A stretch of 64,000 nt of DNA from Anthoceros angustus (lineage: Eukaryota > Plantae > Anthocerotophyta). The notes beneath the pieces were generated by a model that saw only the letters and a program-made list of their open reading frames with translations, had not been told where the DNA came from and did not search any database. A program made the translations under genes and the position numbers. Positions 20,749 to 34,589 of the stretch are shown piece after piece (the stretch's first letter is position 1; every line of letters starts with the position of its first letter). The DNA is taken from the NCBI GenBank assembly GCA_010909165.1, contig VJWM01000007.1, positions 310,001-374,000 of the forward strand, given 5' to 3'.

Positions 20749-22077
20749 GACAACCCACGATGGGGAACCAGGCCGGGGGGCGTGCCCCTGCACTAATGTA
20801 CCCTATAACCCCCAACCGCCCAAGTTTTTATATAGGTGGGTATAAGAATAGTTTTATATTAGATTTACACTTTGTGGTTGATAGTTTGCAAAAACTTGTG
20901 AAAGAGCTTTATGAAGGCACAAAGGAGCCTACCATTGTGATAATATCTCCTTAAGACTGTGTTTCTATGTGCACCTGTATAGTGCCATACAGGCTTAAAA
21001 CCTATCCTACTCACGCATATGCATACATATCTTAACAACCATCTCACTTCCACTTTGTTATAATTCTGTCTGATATTAAAAATCATCCCTCTGACGTTTC
21101 CACATGGCAAATCAACAGTATTACGTTTCAAAGCAAGCTACTCGAAGTTTTTGTTATCGAAGATGTTATGGATATTTCTAAGCGTACATATTTCAAACCT
21201 TTCATTCATATTTTGAAACAAGTGCAAGGTTCAAGGTGCATCTAGGTGATCCAAATGAGATCAATAAGCTTTTCTATATGGGCTTGGTTGAACTTAGTAG
21301 CCCCCTTGTTTCTCCTATGCTATGATGGTTCCCCCTCATGAAAATCCATGGGACACATAGCTGATAGAAGAACAACAAATATTTATATCTATAGGATCCA
21401 GGCCATAGATGGGCACACAGAGAACCATGATATACACTTCAAATACATCACTAAGCTTCATCACTTATGTAACATATCGTGGCAATTCAACTCCATAGTA
21501 GCTGGTTTTTTAACTGTCACAGTTCGCGTACCTCTTGTCAAAGTGCATGTGAACGGTAGGAGGTAGGCGTACCTGGACTGGGTACGTCGGAAGTAATGAC
21601 GAGAGTGTGGCGGCACCGGGATCCCCAAAGCCGTTATTAATATAAAAAGAATAAACCAGCCAACGTATCTCTCGAACTCTGGAACTCGCTCTTCCCCCCA
21701 AAGCCCGGTTTGAAATGCAGCGAAGACTGTCATCTTGACAGGCCCTGACCGGCAGCGGAAGAAGGGCCGCTCTTTCATCATAACAGGCGCTACAAGCCGT
21801 CAATTTGACAGGCGGTACAGGCGTGGACTCCCCTCGTCTCGTCTCGTCTCCTCGCCCCCGGAGTGCCGTTGCCCGCCATCTTTCGAACGGATCCTTTCCC
21901 CGAGCTCGGTGGATGAGGCGTGCAAACGTCTCACTGCTCGCCATTCTTGCCCTGGGCACCTTGCAACCTTGCCTGGACTCGGCTCCGCTGTGCTTGCACT
22001 CCGCTGCACTGCATTGCCCTGCTTCCACCTCCATGTGCTTTTTTTCAAGATAGCCAAGCCTGCCTGGTAGCGCCAAA

Positions 22078-25000
22078 ATGCTGGCCAGGACGTTTCTGTC
22101 CGAGGCGGAGCGGCAAGTGGACCCTCAGCTAGGGTATCCGCGGGGATACGCCAAGCTCTGTCGAAATGCGGCCACGCAGCTGCGAGGGCTCATCACTCCC
22201 TTCACCGAAGGACCCCCGCAGCGTTTCATCCCCTACTCTCCTCAGCCTGATGAGGTTGTTGTTCACCTCTGCACAAATTGCCGCCGGTTGTAGCACATTT
22301 TGCTGTCTGTCCGTCTGTCTCACATTTTGCCTGCTCTGCAGATTGCAAGGTTGAAGGAGCTGGATACTTGGTTCCCTGTTCTGGCGGAAGAGGACCGGGA
22401 TCCTCCCAATGCCCGCAAGTATGCGGACTTCCTGTGGCGTCAACTGGACCACCTTGGGTATGCCAGCGCCTGTCCTCTTCCGTTTTTGGTTTCTTGCCTT
22501 CCGTGGTTGCAAGGGCTGCTCACAGTGTTGTGGCTCCGTCGTGTAGGAACGCTGGTTTTGATCCTGCGAAGTTCAGGGTTGATATGTATGGAAATGTGCT
22601 GTACTGGCATGCTGACGCTGGCTCTCCTTTGGCGTGGGAGATTGACCACTGGTTTCCTCACTCGAGTAGGTTTTCTGATTCCTTGAAAGGAGCTCAGCCT
22701 CCCGGGCCTCCCGGTTCTGCGTGCGCTCCCTAATCAAGTCTTTGCCTATCTTCTGCAGGAGGCGGCAAGACGGTGATGAGTAATTTACGTGTGCTACAGT
22801 GGCAAACGAACCAGCGGAAATCGAATAAGCTGGAGTTTCTGGTGCCTTGGTGGGATCTCCAGCTCGGAGTTTCTGTCAATCAATTCCTTTCAGTGTTCGC
22901 CTCGAAGAATGCTGAGTTCCGGTAGGTCACCGTGTTCCAACCTTCATGGTCCGGTCATCCAGTCTTTTCCAGTGCTTGCCGTTTGTACTCATGCCAGAGG
23001 CTGTGCGCATGGGATGCCGCTTCTTTGCAGGAAGAGGTCGCTTCTGCTCTTCTTTGCAGGCGGCGAAGAAGAAGAAACAGAAGGGAAGAGGCTTGTTGAG
23101 CCTCATTCCTGGCCTGCCCCGTTTCGAGAGCAGAAGGCGGAAATCGGCTTGGCCCCCGCGGCAGTTGTATCGGTGTCAAGGAGGGACAACGAAGATAAAA
23201 TCAGAGGAACCGCGTCTTGGGCTTCAAGGGCTGCCAGGGATTTGAGTACGGAAACCTCTGCTGTGACGGGTGAGGTCACTGACCAGTGTTCTCTCCAGTA
23301 ATTGAGTCTTCCTTTCTCTGGGTCTACCGTCAGACTGCTGACATCAAACCTGAACACGTCAGCTACAGGGACACCTGCGAGACGACGATGGAGCCTGGAA
23401 GAGGAAGAAGCTCTAAGGCGTGCGGTCCTCAAGTTCGGTCCAGGCAGCTGGAAGGAAATCAAGGAGAGCGAGCCTGCGCTGGCCAGCCGGTCGACGGTAC
23501 AGATCAAAGACAAGGTGAGCCAGGATTTGAGCCTTGAGCTGTCTTTGCTCGTTTGTTAGAAATGCTCTTGAAGGCGATCTGACTGAGTTGTCGTGCGTGA
23601 TGGATATCAGTATCGGCTGCTGAGAGGGGATTGGCACCCTGACAAAGAGAATGTCACGGCAAACGTCGATAAGGAGACTGCGGTGGTAGCAGCTATCCAA
23701 AAAGAGCAAAAGTTGAAGCAAATGAGGGAGGACGAGAAGAAAGTCAAGGAGGAGGAGCTGGCTCATTTGGAAGAGACGCTGGGAGCCATCACTCGGGAGA
23801 ATGAAGCCGAGTTTCTAGCATTGGAGGACTTGGAGCGGGTCCTGGTTACAAGCAGAGAGAAGGTGGAAAAGCAACGGCGATGGTCTGAAACCCAGTCGTC
23901 GTATCGCATATGCTTGGAGCGGATGATCCGAGACACCATGCACCAGTAAGTGGCATGGCCATGACTGAACATCCCTAGTTTGAGCTGTATGCTGAAGAGA
24001 CTGTTTTGTGTGAAACCTGTAGGAGCGTGGTGTACAAGGAGCAAGCCCGATTAAATCAGGCAGCCTGCAATGCACTTCAGGTTCGCCTTGACTGTGAGAA
24101 GCAGACCTCCGTGGCTGCTGGCACAGACCTGGTGAAGAAGTACAAGCAGAGGGAAGAGCTGTTGGCTCTGTCCTGTCCAGATCAACTGGACAATGAGCTG
24201 GCGAATGCCTTGGAAATGCAGGCAATGACCAGCTTCGCTCTCGCGGAAGAGGAAGAGGGACCTGAGCCCCCCAAGCTGACGGATTCCGAGCATCGCTGGC
24301 TTCCTCGCCTTCCTTCCGTGGCTGAAGATCGTAGCATTTCTCGTTGCGCGTCGAAGGTGGCGGGGATGTATGATAAGGGAAGCGAGTTCTCGGACAAGGT
24401 ACAAGGGTCTCTGGACACCCGCAGCAGTAGTACAAGATCCCTTCAAGCTGGAACGGAGGAAGAGCTGGTAGCAAGCTTGAGGGGCTTGAAGCTGCGCGAG
24501 GATTTCAGTGATTTGAGCAGGTCTCCAGCAGAAGGGAGTTCAGGCAAACGATCCCTGGACGAGGAGAAGGAGAAGCTGGGCAGGGCTGGAAGGGAAGGTA
24601 GCCGCCTGAAGAAGAAGAAGAAAGTGGATGACGAGGACTCTTCCGACTTCAGGTTTCACAAGGCGGCCTTGCATGAGGTGGAGAAGGGACTCCAATCGGG
24701 GAAGGACAAGAAGTTGATAAATCGTCCAGTTGGAACAGTCGACAAGGACTTGGGGAGGCGATCAACGGAATCGGGAGCGTCCTCTCTCATCAGCTGGTCA
24801 TCAGCAAGAGGAAAGCTTCATGAAGGGGACGCTGAAACTGGCAATGTGCCCGGCTCCGGCTCCGGCACTACTTACTTGAGGGCAATTGAAGGGGACAGGC
24901 TACAGAAGGTCGACAAGGTGAGCCGCGTGACCGAATGGCTTGATGCAGTGCCGACGCCCCGGCCAATTCGTGGTCAAGAAAGGTCTGAGGTTTGGGACAG

Positions 25001-25985
25001 CAACGAGCAGAGGCTTCAGGAACAAGCCAGAGTGGGAGAGCCAAAGCTGGAAGCTGATGCGGACGGAGATAGTGGGGACGCCGGCCGAGCGAGTCTGCAC
25101 CAAGAAACGGAGACTGGAGCAGGGAAGGAGGAAGACTCGGGCAGGCGGCGGACCAGTCGTCGGGATGCTCGCAGGCTGAGAAGAGGCGACGCCGTGCTTG
25201 AGCAGATTGACGCATGGCTAGAGGTGGACAGTGCACGGGGAGCGCCAAAGAGCAGTGAAGGGGAGGGCGAAGAACAGAAAAATGTAATCGTGGTTGAAAG
25301 CCCTGTCCGGCTTGAGAAGGAGGAACCTCTGCTGGACGAAATCCTTCATGACATGCTGGATGCGCATCTCAGCAACTCAGCTGACGCCGAAGAAGTCGAC
25401 GAGGACGAGAAAATACGGCAGCTGGGCAAGTCCAACTTGGACAAATGGTTGCACGTTCTCCTTCATAAGGAGGCCATCGCAGCGGAGGAGCCTTCCAACG
25501 TCGACGGTGAGGGGAATGAAGAAGTCTGCCCGGGTACCCCACAGGCGGAGGACGAATCTTTGGAGAGATTGAGGATGGACTTCAATAACGCGGTGGCCAA
25601 AGAAAGGTCAGAGCAGGAGTCCAATGGCGAAAAACCAACAGGTCTGCTGGTTGCCATGCTGAAGAAGCTGAGCTTCCGACCTCCGGTGGAAGCTAAGCAC
25701 TGGCTGCGGTCTTCCCTCTCTGTCAAACGCACAGAAGAGACCAAAGGTTTGTGCGAAGGGCAAGAGGGGACCTTTCATGGTGGAGCTGTCCTAGAGGAAT
25801 TTCCCGCAGCGACACTGGCCTCTGGTTGCGCCGGCGACGAGGATGTCTGCGGCGTCGTCGCGGGAGACCTGGGTGGCCCGTCATCCTCACTTCGAGCCTC
25901 CATTAAAGCATGCACGGTAGCATGGAAACGAGCAGTCAAGAAGATGGAGACTCGGCCCGTTTCAACGACGTGGGCACTTATGTAA
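22078..25985 (+). CDS. Conserved plant protein with an HNH-like motif, a TRF/telobox-type Myb domain, a coiled coil and a long disordered C-terminus; multi-exon
   Basis: Exons encode LGYPRGYAKLC, NAGFDPAKFRVDMYGNVLYWHADAGSPLAWEIDHWFPHS-RGGKTVMSNLRVLQWQTNQRKSNKLEFLVPWWDLQLG, a Myb exon at 23363-23514 (RRRWSLEEEEALRRAVLKFGPGSWKEIKESEPALASRSTVQIKDK) spliced to YRLL at 23611, SSYRICLERMIRDTMHQ-SVVYKEQARLNQAA, and NLDKWLHVLL. Confidence 0.88.
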
Positions 25986-26659
25986 CTGGACATCCTTCGT
26001 ATTTTCCCGCGTTTTCACCTAAGTGCATTTTTGTGACATGGCCTTGTATATATTAGATTCCCGACAGGCAGCGCACTGATAACCATCCGTCGGAGGAAAC
26101 CGTTTGCGGAATTTCTGATGGAAGTGGTGTTGGATTTTAATGAGTTTGTCCATGTGGAGTCGTGCTAAATGGAAAAGAACACAGACCTGCACATGGCTGC
26201 ACTGTTTCGCGATTACACTTTGTCACACCATCCATCGCTTTGGTTGCTCCGGAAGACTAGTGGGAGAGGTATCTACTACCAGCAGGAGGAGCACACCTAA
26301 CTAACCTTCTCTGCAGGAGCGCCTTGACTTTGTTGAGACTTCAGTCACAGCATTTGTGTGCGCCATCACTATTGTTTTGGTAACGTTAACTAAGCTACTC
26401 CCTAATATATCAACATGCCTACTAGCACATTGAAGCTTGAGAGACACTAGCCATTTTGGGGCTACCACACAACGACACTGACAATCTTTGGAGGCTAGAG
26501 TAGTGCCTCCAACTGTGCTGGCAGGCTAAAGCTAAATCATCGTCCACTAGTTTAGTTACGTGGTCACGGACTTAGGTTTCTAAGTTCTAATTTTGAATTC
26601 TAAGACCACGAAAACTTGTGCAGAAGCGTCACATTCCACTCGTGTTCAGTGCCTTCAAT

Positions 26660-30204: not shown

Positions 30205-30377
30205 CAAAGGGTCGACCGTGTCGGCCCCGGCTTCGTTGGCATGCCTAGCCCGTTCTCGACGAGGAAGAAGGGGAAACACTAGGTCTGGTGCCTGCTAGAC
30301 TCGGGTTATCACAACCCTTGTCCATCGCGGGATCAGAAGAAGGGCAGCATCAAGAAGCAAGAGTCTCAGCAGCAGCT

Positions 30378-31142
30378 ATGGCTTCCACCGCCAGCAACAT
30401 GGCATCCACCTTCTCCGCTTGCAGCCGGTCTCTCGCTCTGTGGTCCGCCCCCCGGCCGCGGTCGGGCGTGGCGCCGGGGAGGTGGAATCCGCAGCCGCAG
30501 ATCGGGCAGCATCTGCAGGCTCAGGTGCAAGGGTTGGTGGGAGTGCGGAGCGTGGCGGCGCCGCTCAAGGGGCTGAAGGCGCTGGCGCCTTTGGTCCGGT
30601 GCATGGCCACGGCGGCGGGGGCGAGCGTGCCGGCCACAGCCGCGCCGTCCAGGAGCATCTCGGTCGGGGAAAAGCTCCCCGAGGCGGAGCTCTCCTACTT
30701 CGATCAGGAAGGGAACATCCAGGTGGTGAAGGTGTCGGAGCTGACCAAGGGGAAGAAGGTGGTGCTTTTCGCGGTGCCCGGGGCCTTCACCCCGACCTGC
30801 TCGCAGAAGCACTTGCCAGGCTTCTTGGAGAAGGCGGACGAGCTGCGGGCCAAGGGCGTGGACACCATAGCCTGCGTGTCTGTGAACGACACCTTCGTGC
30901 TTCGCGCCTGGGGCGAGAGCGTGGGCGTGGGGGACAAGGTGCTGCTACTTTCCGACGGCAACGCTGTTTTCACCAAGGCGCTGGGAGTTTCGGTGGATCT
31001 GAGCGACAAGCCGGCCCTCCTAGGGATCCGATCCCGCCGCTACGCCCTGCTTGCCGACGACGGCGTGGTGAAGGTGCTGAATCTGGAGGAGGGCGGCGCC
31101 TTCACCATCAGCGGGGCAGAGGAAATTCTGAAGGCTCTGTGA
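30378..31142 (+). CDS. PRXIIE: Type II peroxiredoxin, plastid-targeted (PrxIIE-like), intronless
   Basis: Ser/Ala/Arg-rich transit peptide from ATG 30378. Motifs [25 protein letters not shown] (peroxidatic Cys), [11 protein letters not shown] and RSRRYAL...[10 protein letters not shown]. Confidence 0.95.
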
Positions 31143-31433: not shown

Positions 31434-33797
31434 CTATGTCGGGACAATGGTCCCAACGTATCCAAACCCACAAATGAAGTAAGCCAGGGATTGACTGTAC
31501 AAGTAGATCCAAAAGTAATTTCTTCCGAATGCTAAGTCGTATGATGCGCAGAAGAAGAGGTAAAAGGCGGTGAAGAGCTCCAGCGCGTGAAGCCTGCGCA
31601 GTCGAACACGCGTCCCGACAAGAAGAAGACAGAAAATCAGAGTGGGGCCTTGCTGCAACTGTCAATAGAATGGAATAGACGAAGGGGAATGCCACCGTGG
31701 GTGTTCGCCACTGCCGGGTAAAAGAAGGAAGAGAGAATGGTTGATTTCTGGATAGCTCCTCACCTTTCCCCAAACTTCATTCGCCTCCTGCCCAATTTGA
31801 GAGCAGAAGACTTGAGTTTCATCACGTCGCCCAGCTTCTCGGTGACAATCCACTCGTTGACACGCCCGAGGTCGAAGAGGCCAATAATGGTGGCTTTGCT
31901 TCTGTGCAGCGACATGACATTCTCGAACAGGATCCAGAACACTAGCAGATGAAGGGACCTGTGGAGGTAGATCACACCAGGGTGAGGAAGATATTCCAGG
32001 GCACAATCAGGTGTGTGAAGGGTGAAGCAGTGTGAGTATACCTGAAGGTGACCACCGCATTCAGAAATGTTATGACGGAAGGCGCATAAATTGCTCCCCA
32101 GACAGGTAGGCGCACTTCGGGGACAAGGACGGTGGCAGGAATGACGAGGGAGTAGAAGAAGTAGGTGACGAGATGCGCAACCAATTTTCTCACCACGAAG
32201 AAAGAATAGATTATGTGCCATTTGGTGTAGAGGGAAACTCTCTGGCCATTGCACACAACACAACAAACACTCTCTGGTGAGCAAGTGGAACACAAGCTTT
32301 GCGTTTCCTTGGCAAGCTAAGCTAAGAGAAACAGTGTAACTGACCTTGTTTTTCAAAATTTGTGGCAGAATCCTTCGGAAGAGACTGGCGGGTCCGCATG
32401 ACCACCGATGCTGCTGATAGCGGTACGCTTTGAAGGTACTTGGGAGCTCGCTTTTGACCTTGATGTCCCCTCGGAAAAGAAACTTCCAGCCTTTGAGGCT
32501 GGCACGAACTGCCAGATCCATGTCCTCCACTGTGGTGCGATCGTTCCAGCCGCCAGCCTCGTTGATGGCAGATATACGCCACACTCCCGCGGTGCCTGAC
32601 ACACGAGGGAAAGCAAGCAAGGTAAGCGTGAGAAAGCCTGGGCAGGGTCGTTGAACTGCAGTGCAGGAAAGAGGTCGGAATGAGGCATAGAATGTACCGT
32701 TGAAGCCGAAAAAGGAGTGAGAACCAGATCCCACCGGTTGCTCCACCGAGAAATGGTACCCCAGAGACATGTCTTGCATCTTCGTAAGCAAGCATTCGTT
32801 GCTGTTAACTGCAAAGCCACGTCCAACCGTGTGGTGTGCGTGAGCAAGGGCGGAGCAGAGAAGAGCAAAGTAGGCAGCAAAAGGGGCGAGGTTGGGTTGT
32901 GATTCTTGCCGAAAGCCCAGCGCGCTTGCACCAAACCCAGCTGCGGGTCCTTCCGCAAATGCGGCATTGTGAGCTGGAGGAACTCCGGTTGCGGCTGGAA
33001 GTCGGCGTCGAATATGGCCACAAACTCGCAGCTCCGCACGTACTCCTTCTTCATCCCCTCTCGGAGGGCCCCGGCCTTGTAGCCCTTTCGATTCTCGCGG
33101 GTCTCGTACTTGATGTTGATTCCCTTGCTCCTCCATCTCTGACACTCCATCTCCACCATAGCCTGCCACAATGCGCACGCCCTGCCTTCCAATCAATACT
33201 CGCTAATTCCACAAGACAGCAGGCAGCGCAGTGGAGGTGAAGGATGCAGACCTTGATCTGGGGATCCGTGGAGTCGTCCAGCACCTGGATGATGATGCGA
33301 TCCGCGGGCCATACCAGGCCGCAGGCAGCTTGGATGGACAACTGGTACACCTGAGGCGGCAAGGGCAAGAAAATGAAGCCACGGAAGAAAAGGAGAAAGG
33401 TGGCAAAGATGCTGGCACAAGGCAACGCGCCTGGACTCACCTCCTTCTCGTTGTACATTGGAATCTGGACGAGCACGGCGGGACAGTCCGACTGGCCTCC
33501 CAGCTCAATGTCCTCCTCCGCAGGCTCCGACTTAGAAGACCTGAGCCTACGGAAGAAGGCCAGGAGCTTGACGAGGAGGAGCACGACTGCCATGTACACT
33601 CTCTCCAGAAACAGCATGAACACCATGAGCAGGCAGACGTAGACCGCGGCCTGCAGCAGCGGGGCGACGACGGGCGCCCGCAGCCGCAGCCAGAGCGCGG
33701 CCAGCTGCGAGACGACATCGCCGTCCCCAGCCGCCTCGTCGCCCCAGGATCCGCGCTCCACCACGAGCTCGGGGAGGAAGGCATTGGTGAGAGACAT
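31434..33797 (-). CDS. CSLA: Cellulose synthase-like A (glucomannan 4-beta-mannosyltransferase, GT2), multi-exon
   Basis: Motifs VLVQIPMYNEKEVYQLSI, IIQVLDDSTDP, GYKAGAL, EFVAIFDADFQP, GGWNDRTTVEDMDLAVRASLKGWKF, YRYQQHRWSCGP (QxxRW) and EWIVTEKLG, ending GFGYVGTIVPT*. Confidence 0.96.
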
Positions 33798-34589
33798 GGG
33801 CGTGCAGGCCAGACACCGCGGCAGCGGCCTCCCCTCCCCTCACAACGCCACAGCAAGCCCGAGCTATGCGTCCATTGCGTCTGCTCGCTCCAGCCAGCGC
33901 CGAGGCGGGGATCTAGGGGAGGGCGAGGGGAGCAGGGGGAGGCAGCTGCTGCTGCCGATGCTGCTGATGCTGCGGCTCCCGCTGCTGGTGATCCGTGAAC
34001 CACTCTGGAAGCAGCATTGCCTGGTCGTGAAGCCGGCAGTGGGAGGAGGAGGAGGTGTAGCTGATGGCAAACAGGAAAGACAGAGAAGCAGCAGGCAGGA
34101 AAGAAGAAAGGCGATGGCGATCGCGTTGGAGGAGGAGGAGGAAGGAATTTGCGAAGGGAAGGGCTGGCCAGCCGATGCGATGGCTGTTGCTGCTGGTGGC
34201 GGCGAGTGGGGCGCTTGATGAAAGAAAGCAACTGACAGGTAGCTCCTTACCTGCCAGTGTGAGTGCCAAGGCTCGAGCTTGGCGGGAAGAAATCATTTCG
34301 CAATGGTACTGGACACATGGATATGTTAAGAGAGGCAAGTACGAGTCGAGTCTATGTACAGTTGCGTTGCCTGGGAGTCCCGGTCCCGGCCATAAAAATA
34401 AAACTGTTGTGTGTGTTGATGAGAGCATGTCGAGTGGGTTGCATCACAGGCACGCCCGGGTAGGTGCGCTCATTGGCCATTGGCCGGGAACACCGCCTCT
34501 GACGGCTCGGCTTCACCAAGCCAACAAGCGCGCCACACCACCGCCCTGGCCCACTTCCCTGTAAATTGCAGATTGCAAATTCTGCCAAA

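What the first reader, a model, noticed from the sequence alone, without database searches (positions are those of the whole stretch)
22078..25985. HNH-like nuclease motif fused to a telobox-type Myb domain: candidate telomere- or telo-box-directed nuclease
Seen in sequence: a spliceable exon (23363-23514, joining YRLL at 23611) encodes a single Myb repeat ending RSTVQIKDK-YRL. It sits in the same gene as an HNH-like motif, EIDHWFPHSRGGKTVMSNLRVLQWQTNQRK, which has D-H, N and a distal N. Established: the TRF/TRFL telobox consensus is (V/D)LKDKWR(N/T), and HNH/HNN motifs form metal-dependent nuclease folds. Inference: the angiosperm homologues I recall share the HNH and coiled-coil parts but not the Myb repeat. 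The non-seed form could therefore be an uncharacterised sequence-specific nuclease for telomere repeats or telo-boxes. The W-to-Y change in the telobox may shift its specificity.
Basis: partly seen in the sequence, partly recalled or inferred. Interest (0 to 1): 0.75.

Follow-up and report, generated by a model that had tools for sequence, protein, structure and literature searches.

The report
HNH nuclease fused to telomere-type Myb
A real, expressed land-plant gene joins a nuclease-type (HNH) domain, with its catalytic residues present, to a TRF-type telomere-repeat-reading Myb domain and a probable dimerising coiled coil; this protein family has no published study that I could find, and flowering plants have lost the Myb part.

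Summary
An 8-exon GT-AG gene on the + strand (CDS 22078-25985) encodes 1087 aa. Spliced contigs of a public run remove all seven introns exactly as modelled, and one contig runs exon 5, Myb exon 6, exon 7, exon 8. Skipping exon 6 gives a stop at aa 282.

The N-terminal domain is a divergent HNH fold. Pfam hits are borderline, but distant relatives pass the Pfam threshold, and a confident AlphaFold model finds almost only HNH nucleases in an unbiased PDB scan. The window's protein carries D131, H132, N146 and N155.

The Myb exon passes Pfam and matches TRF2/Terfa best. By my reading of that alignment, all four TRF1 base-reading residues are kept.

The family spans land plants, and probably streptophyte algae. 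An intact Myb is found in mosses, lycophytes, ferns and gymnosperms. The angiosperm homologues examined (11 aligned in detail, the rest by family-Myb HMM score) keep at most a vestige, so "non-seed" should read "non-angiosperm". The W-to-Y/F change holds in all land-plant members examined, sits in the core position, and probably does not affect specificity.

Nuclease activity and telomere binding are untested. I found no paper on the family. Verdict: a new variant of known kinds, a candidate fourth plant telobox architecture, of moderate to high interest.

The parts
21915..26184 (+). Minimum transcribed extent of the gene (5' UTR, 8 exons, 3' UTR)
   Evidence: Spliced contigs of run X1 lie on 21915-22252 and run to 24023-26184.
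22078..25985 (+). Coding region. Exons: 22078-22254, 22342-22457, 22547-22665, 22759-22921, 23031-23269, 23363-23514, 23611-23945, 24023-25985. Product 1087 aa; stop TAA at 25983-25985.
   Evidence: Model A. All seven joints confirmed by contigs. Colinear with orthologues.
22129..22164 (+). Conserved N-terminal family motif LGYPxGYAKLCR (aa 18-29), function unknown
   Evidence: Invariant or nearly invariant columns in A1. Also present in the algal-like locus L001.
22417..23100 (+). HNH (beta-beta-alpha-Me) nuclease-like domain, aa 85-215, spread over exons 2-5
   Evidence: Pfam HNH families hit the same stretch. AF2 model with pLDDT 83.5. The top of the unbiased PDB scan is almost all HNH nucleases.
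22644..22649 (+). Codons for D131 and H132: the putative metal ligand and general base at the end of strand beta-1
   Evidence: Coordinates. D in 45 of 49 and H in 48 of 49 family members. Strand position.
22666..22758 (+). Intron 3 (93 nt), which splits the HNH motif inside the SRGG codon for R138
22782..22784 (+). Codon for N146, the structural Asn of the HNH motif (invariant)
22809..22811 (+). Codon for N155, at the position of the last metal ligand (H/N) on the alpha-helix
   Evidence: Present here, variable across the plant family, conserved in distant relatives.
23363..23514 (+). Exon 6, the Myb exon (152 nt). It encodes the N-terminal arm, helices 1-2 and helix 3 up to KDK.
   Evidence: PF00249 at 38 bits. 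Best PDB matches are Terfa and TRF2. Included in the 2801-nt contig. Skipping it gives a stop at aa 282.
23374..23634 (+). Whole Myb domain, aa 276-330, across intron 6 (23515-23610). Aromatic residues W281, W301, Y323. Putative DNA-reading residues R278, K320, D321, R324.
   Evidence: It is 71-84% identical to orthologues, against 20-35% for the flanking linkers.
23692..24131 (+). Conserved helical, charged region (aa 350-470), a probable dimerising coiled coil. It contains the near-invariant block VEKQRRW..TQSSYR.CLE.MIRD.MHQS..YKEQARLNQAACNAL.
   Evidence: Alignment; 43-63% identity across all land plants. The coiled-coil nature itself is inferred, not computed.
24609..24623 (+). Run of five Lys (aa 630-634), a possible nuclear localisation signal
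   Evidence: Seen in the sequence. Inference only.
25425..25451 (+). Conserved C-terminal motif GKSNLDKWL (aa 902-910)
   Evidence: Conserved from mosses to angiosperms. Function unknown.
25893..25949 (+). Conserved C-terminal motif RASIKA....W[KR][KR][AS]VKK.E (aa 1058-1076)
   Evidence: Function unknown.

Best explanation
Shown:
- This is a genuine, spliced and transcribed nuclear gene of a bryophyte-grade land plant.
- Its 1087-aa product has five parts:
  1. a family-specific N-terminal segment;
  2. a divergent HNH (beta-beta-alpha-Me) domain carrying D131-H132, N146, N155 and K158, residues placed at the positions usual for HNH catalytic and metal-binding residues;
  3. one TRF-type (telobox) Myb domain;
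  4. a strongly conserved helical region;
  5. a long, poorly conserved acidic tail ending in two conserved motifs.
- The architecture is at least as old as land plants, and probably older.

Inferred mechanism:
- The helical region dimerises the protein and so presents two Myb domains, as the TRFH domain does in TRF1/TRF2 and the coiled coil does in plant TRBs.
- The Myb pair reads TTTAGGG-type repeats at telomeres, interstitial telomeric repeats or promoter telo-boxes.
- The HNH domain then nicks or cuts DNA nearby, using a metal held by D131 and N155 with H132 as general base.
- On this reading it is a cis-fused version of what mammals achieve in trans, where a nuclease such as Apollo is recruited by TRF2.
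- After gene duplications, one copy repeatedly lost the Myb and changed N155. Angiosperms keep only such a copy.
For: Gene and transcript:
- Gene model and frame.
- All seven introns removed in run X1 contigs, with the Myb exon included.

HNH domain:
- Pfam HNH_4 at 22.8 bits (cut-off 22) and HNH at 18.7 bits on the Sphagnum orthologue; 29 of 49 members hit PF01844 on the same 35 residues.
- A profile search of 1.84 billion proteins finds distant relatives (E about 1e-12 to 1e-19). Of these, P0243 passes PF01844 at 27.8 bits.
- Those relatives keep DH..N..N..K.
- The AF2 model (pLDDT 83.5) places W128-H132 on a strand, L147-Q151 on a second strand and W152-K158 on a helix.
- Of 48,161 PDB chains only 59 reach Z>=2, and the top 20 are all HNH/beta-beta-alpha-Me nucleases. 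The best is a Cas9 HNH domain, Z 5.9, rmsd 1.7 A over 66 residues.

Myb domain:
- PF00249 at 38 bits.
- Best full-length PDB matches are Terfa (2e-6) and TRF2 (1e-5).
- The TRF1 base-contact residues R380, K421, D422 and R425 (Table 3 of PMC2377444) correspond to R278, K320, D321 and R324 here. This mapping is my reading of the alignments.
- Domain pI is 9.7.
- The Myb is 71-84% identical between this plant and Sphagnum, Diphasiastrum, ferns and Ginkgo, while the linkers on either side are 20-35% identical. That indicates selection on the domain itself.

Co-retention of Myb and N155:
- N or H at position 155 occurs only in Myb-intact proteins: 13 of 24, against 0 of 27.
Against: - No biochemical data exist for any member that I could find.
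- Sequence matches to HNH models are borderline for the plant proteins. The window's own split exons give no HNH hit. Structural Z scores are modest (below 8).
- The structural Zn-binding cysteines of many HNH enzymes are absent.
- Position 155 is variable in the plant family, and H132 is Y in one Ceratodon paralogue, so catalysis is evidently dispensable in some members.
- The last telobox residue is L rather than N/T, and the third aromatic is Y.
- The association of N155 with the Myb is not significant once relatedness is allowed for: 6 independent pairs, p about 0.25.
- Dimerisation is inferred only.
- The structure and most statistics come from orthologues, not the window's own protein. 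I did not submit the spliced protein because it has no reference form.
Confidence: 0.45

Rival explanations
1. It is a telo-box or telomere-bound chromatin or transcription factor whose HNH domain no longer cuts DNA. On this reading the HNH fold serves as a DNA- or protein-binding module, and the protein works like a TRB-type recruiter.
For: - Position 155 is freely replaced (R, Y, K, S, C) in many members whose other residues remain strongly conserved, and one paralogue has Y at H132. Conservation therefore does not depend on a complete catalytic set.
- The structural Zn cysteines are absent.
- The best-studied plant telobox proteins, the TRBs, act mainly in gene regulation.
Against: - The window's protein, and the slowly evolving orthologues in every major lineage, keep D, H, N and N with the same relative placement as in HNH models.
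- Distant relatives almost always keep the last N.
- H132 is present in 48 of 49 members and N146 and K158 in all 49.
Confidence: 0.25
2. It is an active HNH nuclease working in general DNA repair, recombination or replication-stress processing. The Myb would then act as a SANT-like histone or protein-interaction module, or as a non-specific DNA clamp, and not as a telomere-repeat reader.
For: - Angiosperms and several paralogues dispense with the Myb yet keep the HNH domain, coiled coil and C-terminal motifs. The core function therefore does not need the Myb.
- Helices 1-2 of the exon also match SNAPc4, c-Myb and the CHD1 SANT-like domain at similar E-values.
Against: - Alignments that include helix 3 are to telobox proteins only.
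- All four TRF1 base-contact residues are retained, plus R415, S417 (as T) and R423 (as K).
- The domain is basic (pI 9.7), unlike typical acidic SANT domains.
Confidence: 0.2
3. The fusion is an artefact of gene prediction: the Myb exon belongs to another transcript or is normally skipped.
For: None found. The only caveats are that the run is labelled RNA by guess and that only one run holds the transcript.
Against: - One 2801-nt contig joins exons 5, 6, 7 and 8 with exact GT..AG joints.
- Skipping exon 6 gives a stop at aa 282, before the most conserved block.
- The same order of domains is annotated independently in mosses, lycophytes, ferns and gymnosperms.
Confidence: 0.02

Closest known systems
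TRF1/TRF2/Terfa telobox Myb domains (vertebrate shelterin)
   Same: - Single three-helix Myb with a basic N-terminal arm.
- Best PDB sequence matches: Terfa 2e-6, TRF2 1e-5.
- Base-reading residues R, K, D, R retained.
- Probably presented as a dimer.
   Different: - The Myb is internal, not C-terminal.
- The third aromatic is Y (or F/C in relatives) instead of W.
- There is no TRFH domain.
- It is fused to an HNH domain. In mammals, telomere nucleases such as Apollo are recruited in trans (my own knowledge).
Plant telobox proteins: TRB/SMH, TRFL family 1, TRFL family 2 (the three classes named in bioRxiv 10.64898/2026.01.29.702503)
   Same: Single telobox-type Myb. A coiled coil accompanies the Myb, as in TRBs.
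   Different: - No H1/H5 globular domain was found, so it is not a TRB.
- The Myb is neither N- nor C-terminal.
- It carries an HNH domain.
- It is absent as a Myb protein from angiosperms, which may be why screens based on Arabidopsis and rice did not list it (inference).
HNH (beta-beta-alpha-Me) nucleases: Cas9/IscB HNH domains, Gme HNH nicking endonuclease (4h9d), McrA, human ZRANB3 HNH
   Same: - Same core fold, with His at the end of strand 1, Asn before strand 2 and N on the helix.
- By my recollection the D-H, N, N spacing (14 and 9 residues) equals that of SpCas9 D839/H840, N854, N863.
   Different: - Sequence identity is only about 20-25%, and Z is at most 5.9.
- There are no CxxC zinc-binding pairs.
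- Large family-specific N- and C-terminal helical extensions are present.
- It is a cellular eukaryotic gene, not a defence or mobile-element gene.
Uncharacterised protist proteins with the same extended HNH-like domain plus a C-terminal MYND finger (P0193, P0213, P0223 and others), and cryptophyte (Hanusia phi) relatives
   Same: Share the extended domain core LW..L...FRVD.YGNV...DH.FP.SRGG.T..NL....AN..K..LE....G.S..QFL, at E 1e-12 to 1e-19 against the plant profile.
   Different: They lack the plant N-terminal motif, the Myb, the conserved coiled-coil block and the tail. They carry a MYND or HhH module instead.

Membership tests
HNH / beta-beta-alpha-Me nuclease superfamily | A significant match to an HNH family model | tested here: inconclusive
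   - The window's own exons, split by intron 3, give no hit.
- The Sphagnum orthologue scores HNH_4 22.8 bits (cut-off 22) and HNH 18.7 bits (cut-off 21.4).
- 29 of 49 members hit PF01844 at E<=1 on the same stretch.
- A distant relative, P0243, passes at 27.8 bits.
HNH / beta-beta-alpha-Me nuclease superfamily | A two-strand plus helix core with the catalytic His at the end of strand 1 | tested here: met
   - AF2 model of the orthologue: pLDDT 83.5, strands at 128-132 and 147-151, helix at 152-158.
- Unbiased scan: the top 20 of only 59 chains with Z>=2 are all HNH-type nucleases, best Z 5.9 with rmsd 1.7 A over 66 residues.
- The test was done on a 63%-identical orthologue, not on the window protein itself.
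HNH / beta-beta-alpha-Me nuclease superfamily | Catalytic and metal residues: D/H-H, structural N, final H/N | tested here: met
   The window has D131, H132, N146 and N155, plus K158. Family-wide counts are H132 48/49, N146 49/49, D131 45/49, but N155 only 10/49.
HNH / beta-beta-alpha-Me nuclease superfamily | Metal-dependent nuclease activity | not testable with these tools
   Needs an in vitro assay with an H132A control.
Telobox (TRF-type) Myb domain | Myb/SANT three-helix domain above the family threshold | tested here: met
   PF00249 at E 1.9e-9 and 38 bits, cut-off 24.4, on window:23365-23514.
Telobox (TRF-type) Myb domain | Telobox signature in helix 3 (xLKDKWRN/T) | tested here: inconclusive
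   The window has VQIKDKYRLL. K, D, K and R are present, W is replaced by Y, and the last N/T by L. An algal-like relative has QLRDKWKSL with W.
Telobox (TRF-type) Myb domain | Residues that read telomeric bases in TRF1 (R380, K421, D422, R425) | tested here: met
   R278, K320, D321 and R324 sit at the aligned positions. The contacts come from Table 3 of PMC2377444. The alignment comes; the numbering correspondence is my own reading.
Telobox (TRF-type) Myb domain | Specific binding to (TTTAGGG)n | not testable with these tools
   Needs EMSA, DAP-seq or ChIP.
Plant TRB/SMH family | N-terminal Myb followed by a histone H1/H5 globular domain | tested here: not met
   No linker-histone domain appears in any exon or in the orthologues. 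The Myb starts at aa 276.
Plant TRFL family 1 | C-terminal Myb with the Myb-extension (fourth helix) | tested here: not met
   - The Myb is internal, with more than 750 aa following it.
- PDB matches to AtTRP1 and NgTRF1 are weaker (1.5e-3 to 0.2) than those to TRF2 and Terfa.
- The presence of a fourth helix was not modelled.

The most novel reading that the evidence does not exclude
An ancient streptophyte enzyme that reads telomeric repeats with its own telobox Myb and cuts or nicks DNA there with a built-in HNH nuclease. That would make it a dedicated telomere or interstitial-telomere-repeat nuclease (trimming, end processing or repeat surveillance). It would be kept from algae to gymnosperms and remodelled in flowering plants, which lost the reader domain.
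Probability: 0.25. Interest if true: 0.85.

Novelty: new variant of a known kind. Interest (0 to 1): 0.62.

Why it matters
Plant telomere biology still lacks clear end-protection and end-processing factors. A recent preprint (10.64898/2026.01.29.702503) lists only three telobox protein classes and says that key factors may remain unidentified. Those classes were defined largely from work in Arabidopsis, rice and tobacco.

This family would be a fourth telobox architecture and the only one carrying an enzyme domain. It is invisible in angiosperm models because their copies lost the Myb. It gives a directly testable candidate in tractable bryophytes for sequence-directed DNA cleavage at telomeric repeats.

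It is also a natural experiment. The reader domain was lost repeatedly after duplication, and the last metal ligand appears to go with it, though that link is not statistically supported.

Even if the nuclease proves inactive, a protein of about 1000 aa conserved across all land plants with no literature is worth a knockout.

Tried and rejected
- **First AF2 run.** On a 49-sequence alignment of plants only it failed (pLDDT 41.5). I did not use that model.
- **PDB profile search.** The plant N-terminal alignment found nothing.
- **ESM Atlas feature search.** It gave only sub-threshold HNH leads (0.77-0.79).
- **Foldseek against PDB.** No hit at E<=1e-3, so I relied on the VIA-align scans.
- **Third word-index search.** Run with the distant-homologue alignment, it returned only 6 proteins.
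- **Tree error.** The second tree in that call is invalid, because unaligned rows were treated as aligned. I redid it correctly.
- **N155 versus Myb.** The link is suggestive but not significant by independent pairs.
- **Literature.** Four searches found nothing on the family.
- **Arabidopsis orthologue.** I could not identify one among the 120 listed hits, so I could not search by gene identifier.
- **Origin of locus L001.** The source organism (run SRR14092360) could not be identified.
- **The window's own spliced protein.** I did not submit it to Pfam or AF2 as a whole because it has no reference form. Orthologues stood in for it.
Full report
**1. Observation**

Reading 21500-26500 and building the splice model gives an 8-exon gene on the + strand. 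Every intron is GT-AG.
- Exons: 22078-22254, 22342-22457, 22547-22665, 22759-22921, 23031-23269, 23363-23514, 23611-23945, 24023-25985.
- The product is 1087 aa without an internal stop.

**2. Transcription**

The one run that holds most of the stretch (X1, 0.77 of sampled words, same organism) has contigs identical to the window. In them all seven introns are removed at exactly the modelled sites.
- One 2801-nt contig joins exon 5, the Myb exon, exon 7 and exon 8, and runs into the 3' UTR to 26184.
- The run's RNA label is a guess. Seven precise GT..AG deletions are hard to explain other than by splicing.
- Exon 6 is 152 nt long. Skipping it gives a stop at aa 282, before the most conserved block of the protein, and retention of any intron also truncates.

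**3. The Myb domain**

- The exon alone hits PF00249 at 38 bits (cut-off 24.4).
- Against PDB sequences, the matches that cover all three helices are zebrafish Terfa (2e-6), TRF2 (1e-5), TRF1, AtTRP1 and Tbf1.
- SNAPc4, c-Myb and CHD1 match helices 1-2 only. The Sphagnum orthologue gives the same picture.
- Table 3 of PMC2377444 lists the TRF1 base contacts as R380, K421, D422 and R425. The aligned residues here are R278, K320, D321 and R324.
- The phosphate contacts R415, S417 and R423 correspond to R314, T316 and K322.
- The numbering correspondence is my reading of the HMMER alignments.
- W424, the position that is Y323 here, is not among the DNA contacts. It is the third core aromatic residue, so I do not expect Y to change specificity.
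- The domain is basic (pI 9.7).
- It is 71-84% identical between this plant and Sphagnum, Diphasiastrum, Ceratopteris and Ginkgo. The linkers on either side are only 20-35% identical. This shows selection on the domain itself.

**4. The HNH domain**

Sequence evidence for the plant proteins is borderline but consistent.
- HNH_4 scores 22.8 bits (cut-off 22) and HNH 18.7 bits on P0007.
- 29, 25 and 23 of 49 members hit the three HNH families on the same 35 residues.
- A profile search of 1.84 billion representatives found 683 hits. These include distant eukaryotic proteins of 250-470 aa that share the whole extended domain.
- Several of these carry a C-terminal MYND finger, one carries an HhH motif, and two are from the cryptophyte Hanusia phi.
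- One of them, P0243, passes PF01844 at 27.8 bits.
- These relatives keep DH..N..N..K almost without exception.

Adding them to the alignment turned a failed AF2 model (pLDDT 41.5) into a confident one (pLDDT 83.5, pTM 0.77).
- W128-H132 lie on a strand, L147-Q151 on a second strand and W152-K158 on a helix. This is the beta-beta-alpha-Me layout.
- Foldseek found no hit at E<=1e-3, but its weak list is nearly all HNH nucleases.
- In an unbiased VIA-align scan of 48,161 chains, only 59 reach Z>=2.
- The top 20 are all HNH-type nucleases: Cas9 and IscB HNH domains, Gme HNH, McrA, PacI, Cas8-HNH, Cap5, TagI and a type II restriction endonuclease (4l0k).
- The best hit has Z 5.9 with rmsd 1.7 A over 66 residues.
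- The Z values are modest, so the fold call rests on the combination of evidence.

In the window protein the residues are D131, H132, N146, N155 and K158.

**5. A caution on catalysis**

It is Cys in 16 (mostly angiosperms) and Y, R, K or S elsewhere. One Ceratodon paralogue has Y at H132.
- N or H at position 155 is found only in proteins with an intact Myb: 13 of 24, against 0 of 27.
- With only six independent contrasts this is not significant.
- The window's protein is of the conservative, apparently ancestral type. It has the complete residue set and an intact Myb.

**6. Distribution and history**

The word-index search found 254 relatives in mosses, lycophytes, ferns, gymnosperms and angiosperms. 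They carry only automatic names: HNH nuclease domain-containing, Myb-like domain-containing, and spurious 'trichohyalin'.

A family-specific Myb HMM separates three grades.
- Intact Myb (87 bits or more): mosses, Selaginella, Diphasiastrum, ferns, Ginkgo Gb_23424 and Cryptomeria SUGI_1199280.
- Degenerate Myb (40-55 bits): two Physcomitrium paralogues, two Sphagnum proteins (one of them a partial match), Ginkgo Gb_34647 and four unnamed proteins that cluster with the gymnosperm paralogues.
- Vestige or none (10 bits or fewer, or no hit): every angiosperm in the set, several fern paralogues, the second Cryptomeria paralogue, Taxus and one Sphagnum protein.

Some angiosperms still show a helix 1-2 remnant with the tryptophans lost; the 11 aligned in detail lack helix 3 altogether.

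A tree built without the Myb columns shows the following.
- The intact-Myb gymnosperm clade (support 95) is sister to a clade (support 97) that holds the degenerate gymnosperm copies plus all angiosperms.
- Ferns and mosses have their own duplications and losses.
- At least 6 changes of Myb state are needed.
- The window protein is sister to all moss sequences (support 89).

'Non-seed form' should therefore read 'non-angiosperm form'. The Myb is ancestral rather than a lineage-specific gain.

**7. Depth beyond land plants**

- Spirogloea muscicola (Zygnematophyceae) proteins P0156 and P0257 have the HNH domain followed by the start of a Myb. The Pfam score is 18.5 bits, below threshold, and the gene model is truncated.
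- A 63%-GC contig of unknown origin (L001) encodes the N-terminal motif and the HNH domain, at E about 1e-39 to the plant profile.
- On the same strand it then has a Myb-like exon ending ...QLRDK, followed by a GTGAGT donor and an acceptor before WKSLVRND.
- This is the same phase-0 intron position as KDK|YRLL in the window, with W as the third aromatic. A coiled-coil-like ORF follows.
- This suggests the fusion predates land plants and that W-to-Y/F arose later. The organism is unidentified, so I hold this loosely.

**8. Mechanism**

The shown and inferred steps are separated in the best explanation. The key inference is that the conserved helical block after the Myb dimerises the protein. 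Single telobox Myb domains need to be paired in this way, as in TRF1/2 and the TRBs.

The rivals cannot be excluded without experiments. They are a non-catalytic, TRB-like regulator, and a general repair nuclease whose Myb is not telomere-specific.

**9. Novelty**

Four literature searches found nothing on this family. A 2026 preprint names three classes of plant telobox proteins, and this architecture is not one of them.

The proteins are in public databases, so the sequences are not new. The reading as a telobox-HNH fusion and its evolutionary pattern appear to be new.

The earlier notes of this scan on the same window concern other loci. A word search of the scan's notes found nothing related.

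Noticed in passing
L001:2852-4515 (Logan contig SRR14092360_48743, 63% GC, organism unknown): Algal-like orthologue with the HNH domain, a Myb exon and a coiled coil on one strand. The Myb intron sits at the same phase-0 position as in the window (RDK|WKSL against KDK|YRLL), and the third aromatic residue is W.
   Followed up: partly
Proteins P0193, P0213, P0220, P0223, P0224, P0233, P0235 (alignment A2): An undescribed protist family that joins the same extended HNH-like domain to a C-terminal MYND zinc finger. P0252 has an N-terminal helix-hairpin-helix motif instead. P0250 and P0258 are from the cryptophyte Hanusia phi.
   Followed up: partly
Family alignment positions 136 and 155 (window 22659-22661 and 22809-22811): In most angiosperms both positions change together to Cys (FPCSR ... 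QWQVCKKK). The ancestral-type proteins have H and N there. This could be a new metal site or a mark of lost catalysis. It is unexplained.
   Followed up: no
P0185 (306 aa, metagenomic): A protein made of four tandem copies of an HNH-like unit related to this domain (PF01844 at 69.7 bits summed).
   Followed up: no
P0109 (Sesamum angolense, named NADH-ubiquinone oxidoreductase chain 5): A database entry in which a member of this family is fused to, or misannotated with, a mitochondrial nad5 fragment (PF00361). It is probably an annotation artefact.
   Followed up: no
window 30288-31142 (+): An uninterrupted ORF of 284 aa that looks like a plastid-targeted type II peroxiredoxin (motif PGAFTPTCS). 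An ordinary neighbouring gene.
   Followed up: no
window 31760-33800 (-): ORFs with the QQHRWSCGPA motif of a family 2 glycosyltransferase (cellulose synthase-like/CslA type), split by introns.
   Followed up: no
window 23361-23368: Two AG acceptors lie 6 nt apart at the start of the Myb exon (cag|ctacag|). The assembled transcript uses the upstream one. Use of the downstream one would delete two residues (AT) in frame.
   Followed up: partly
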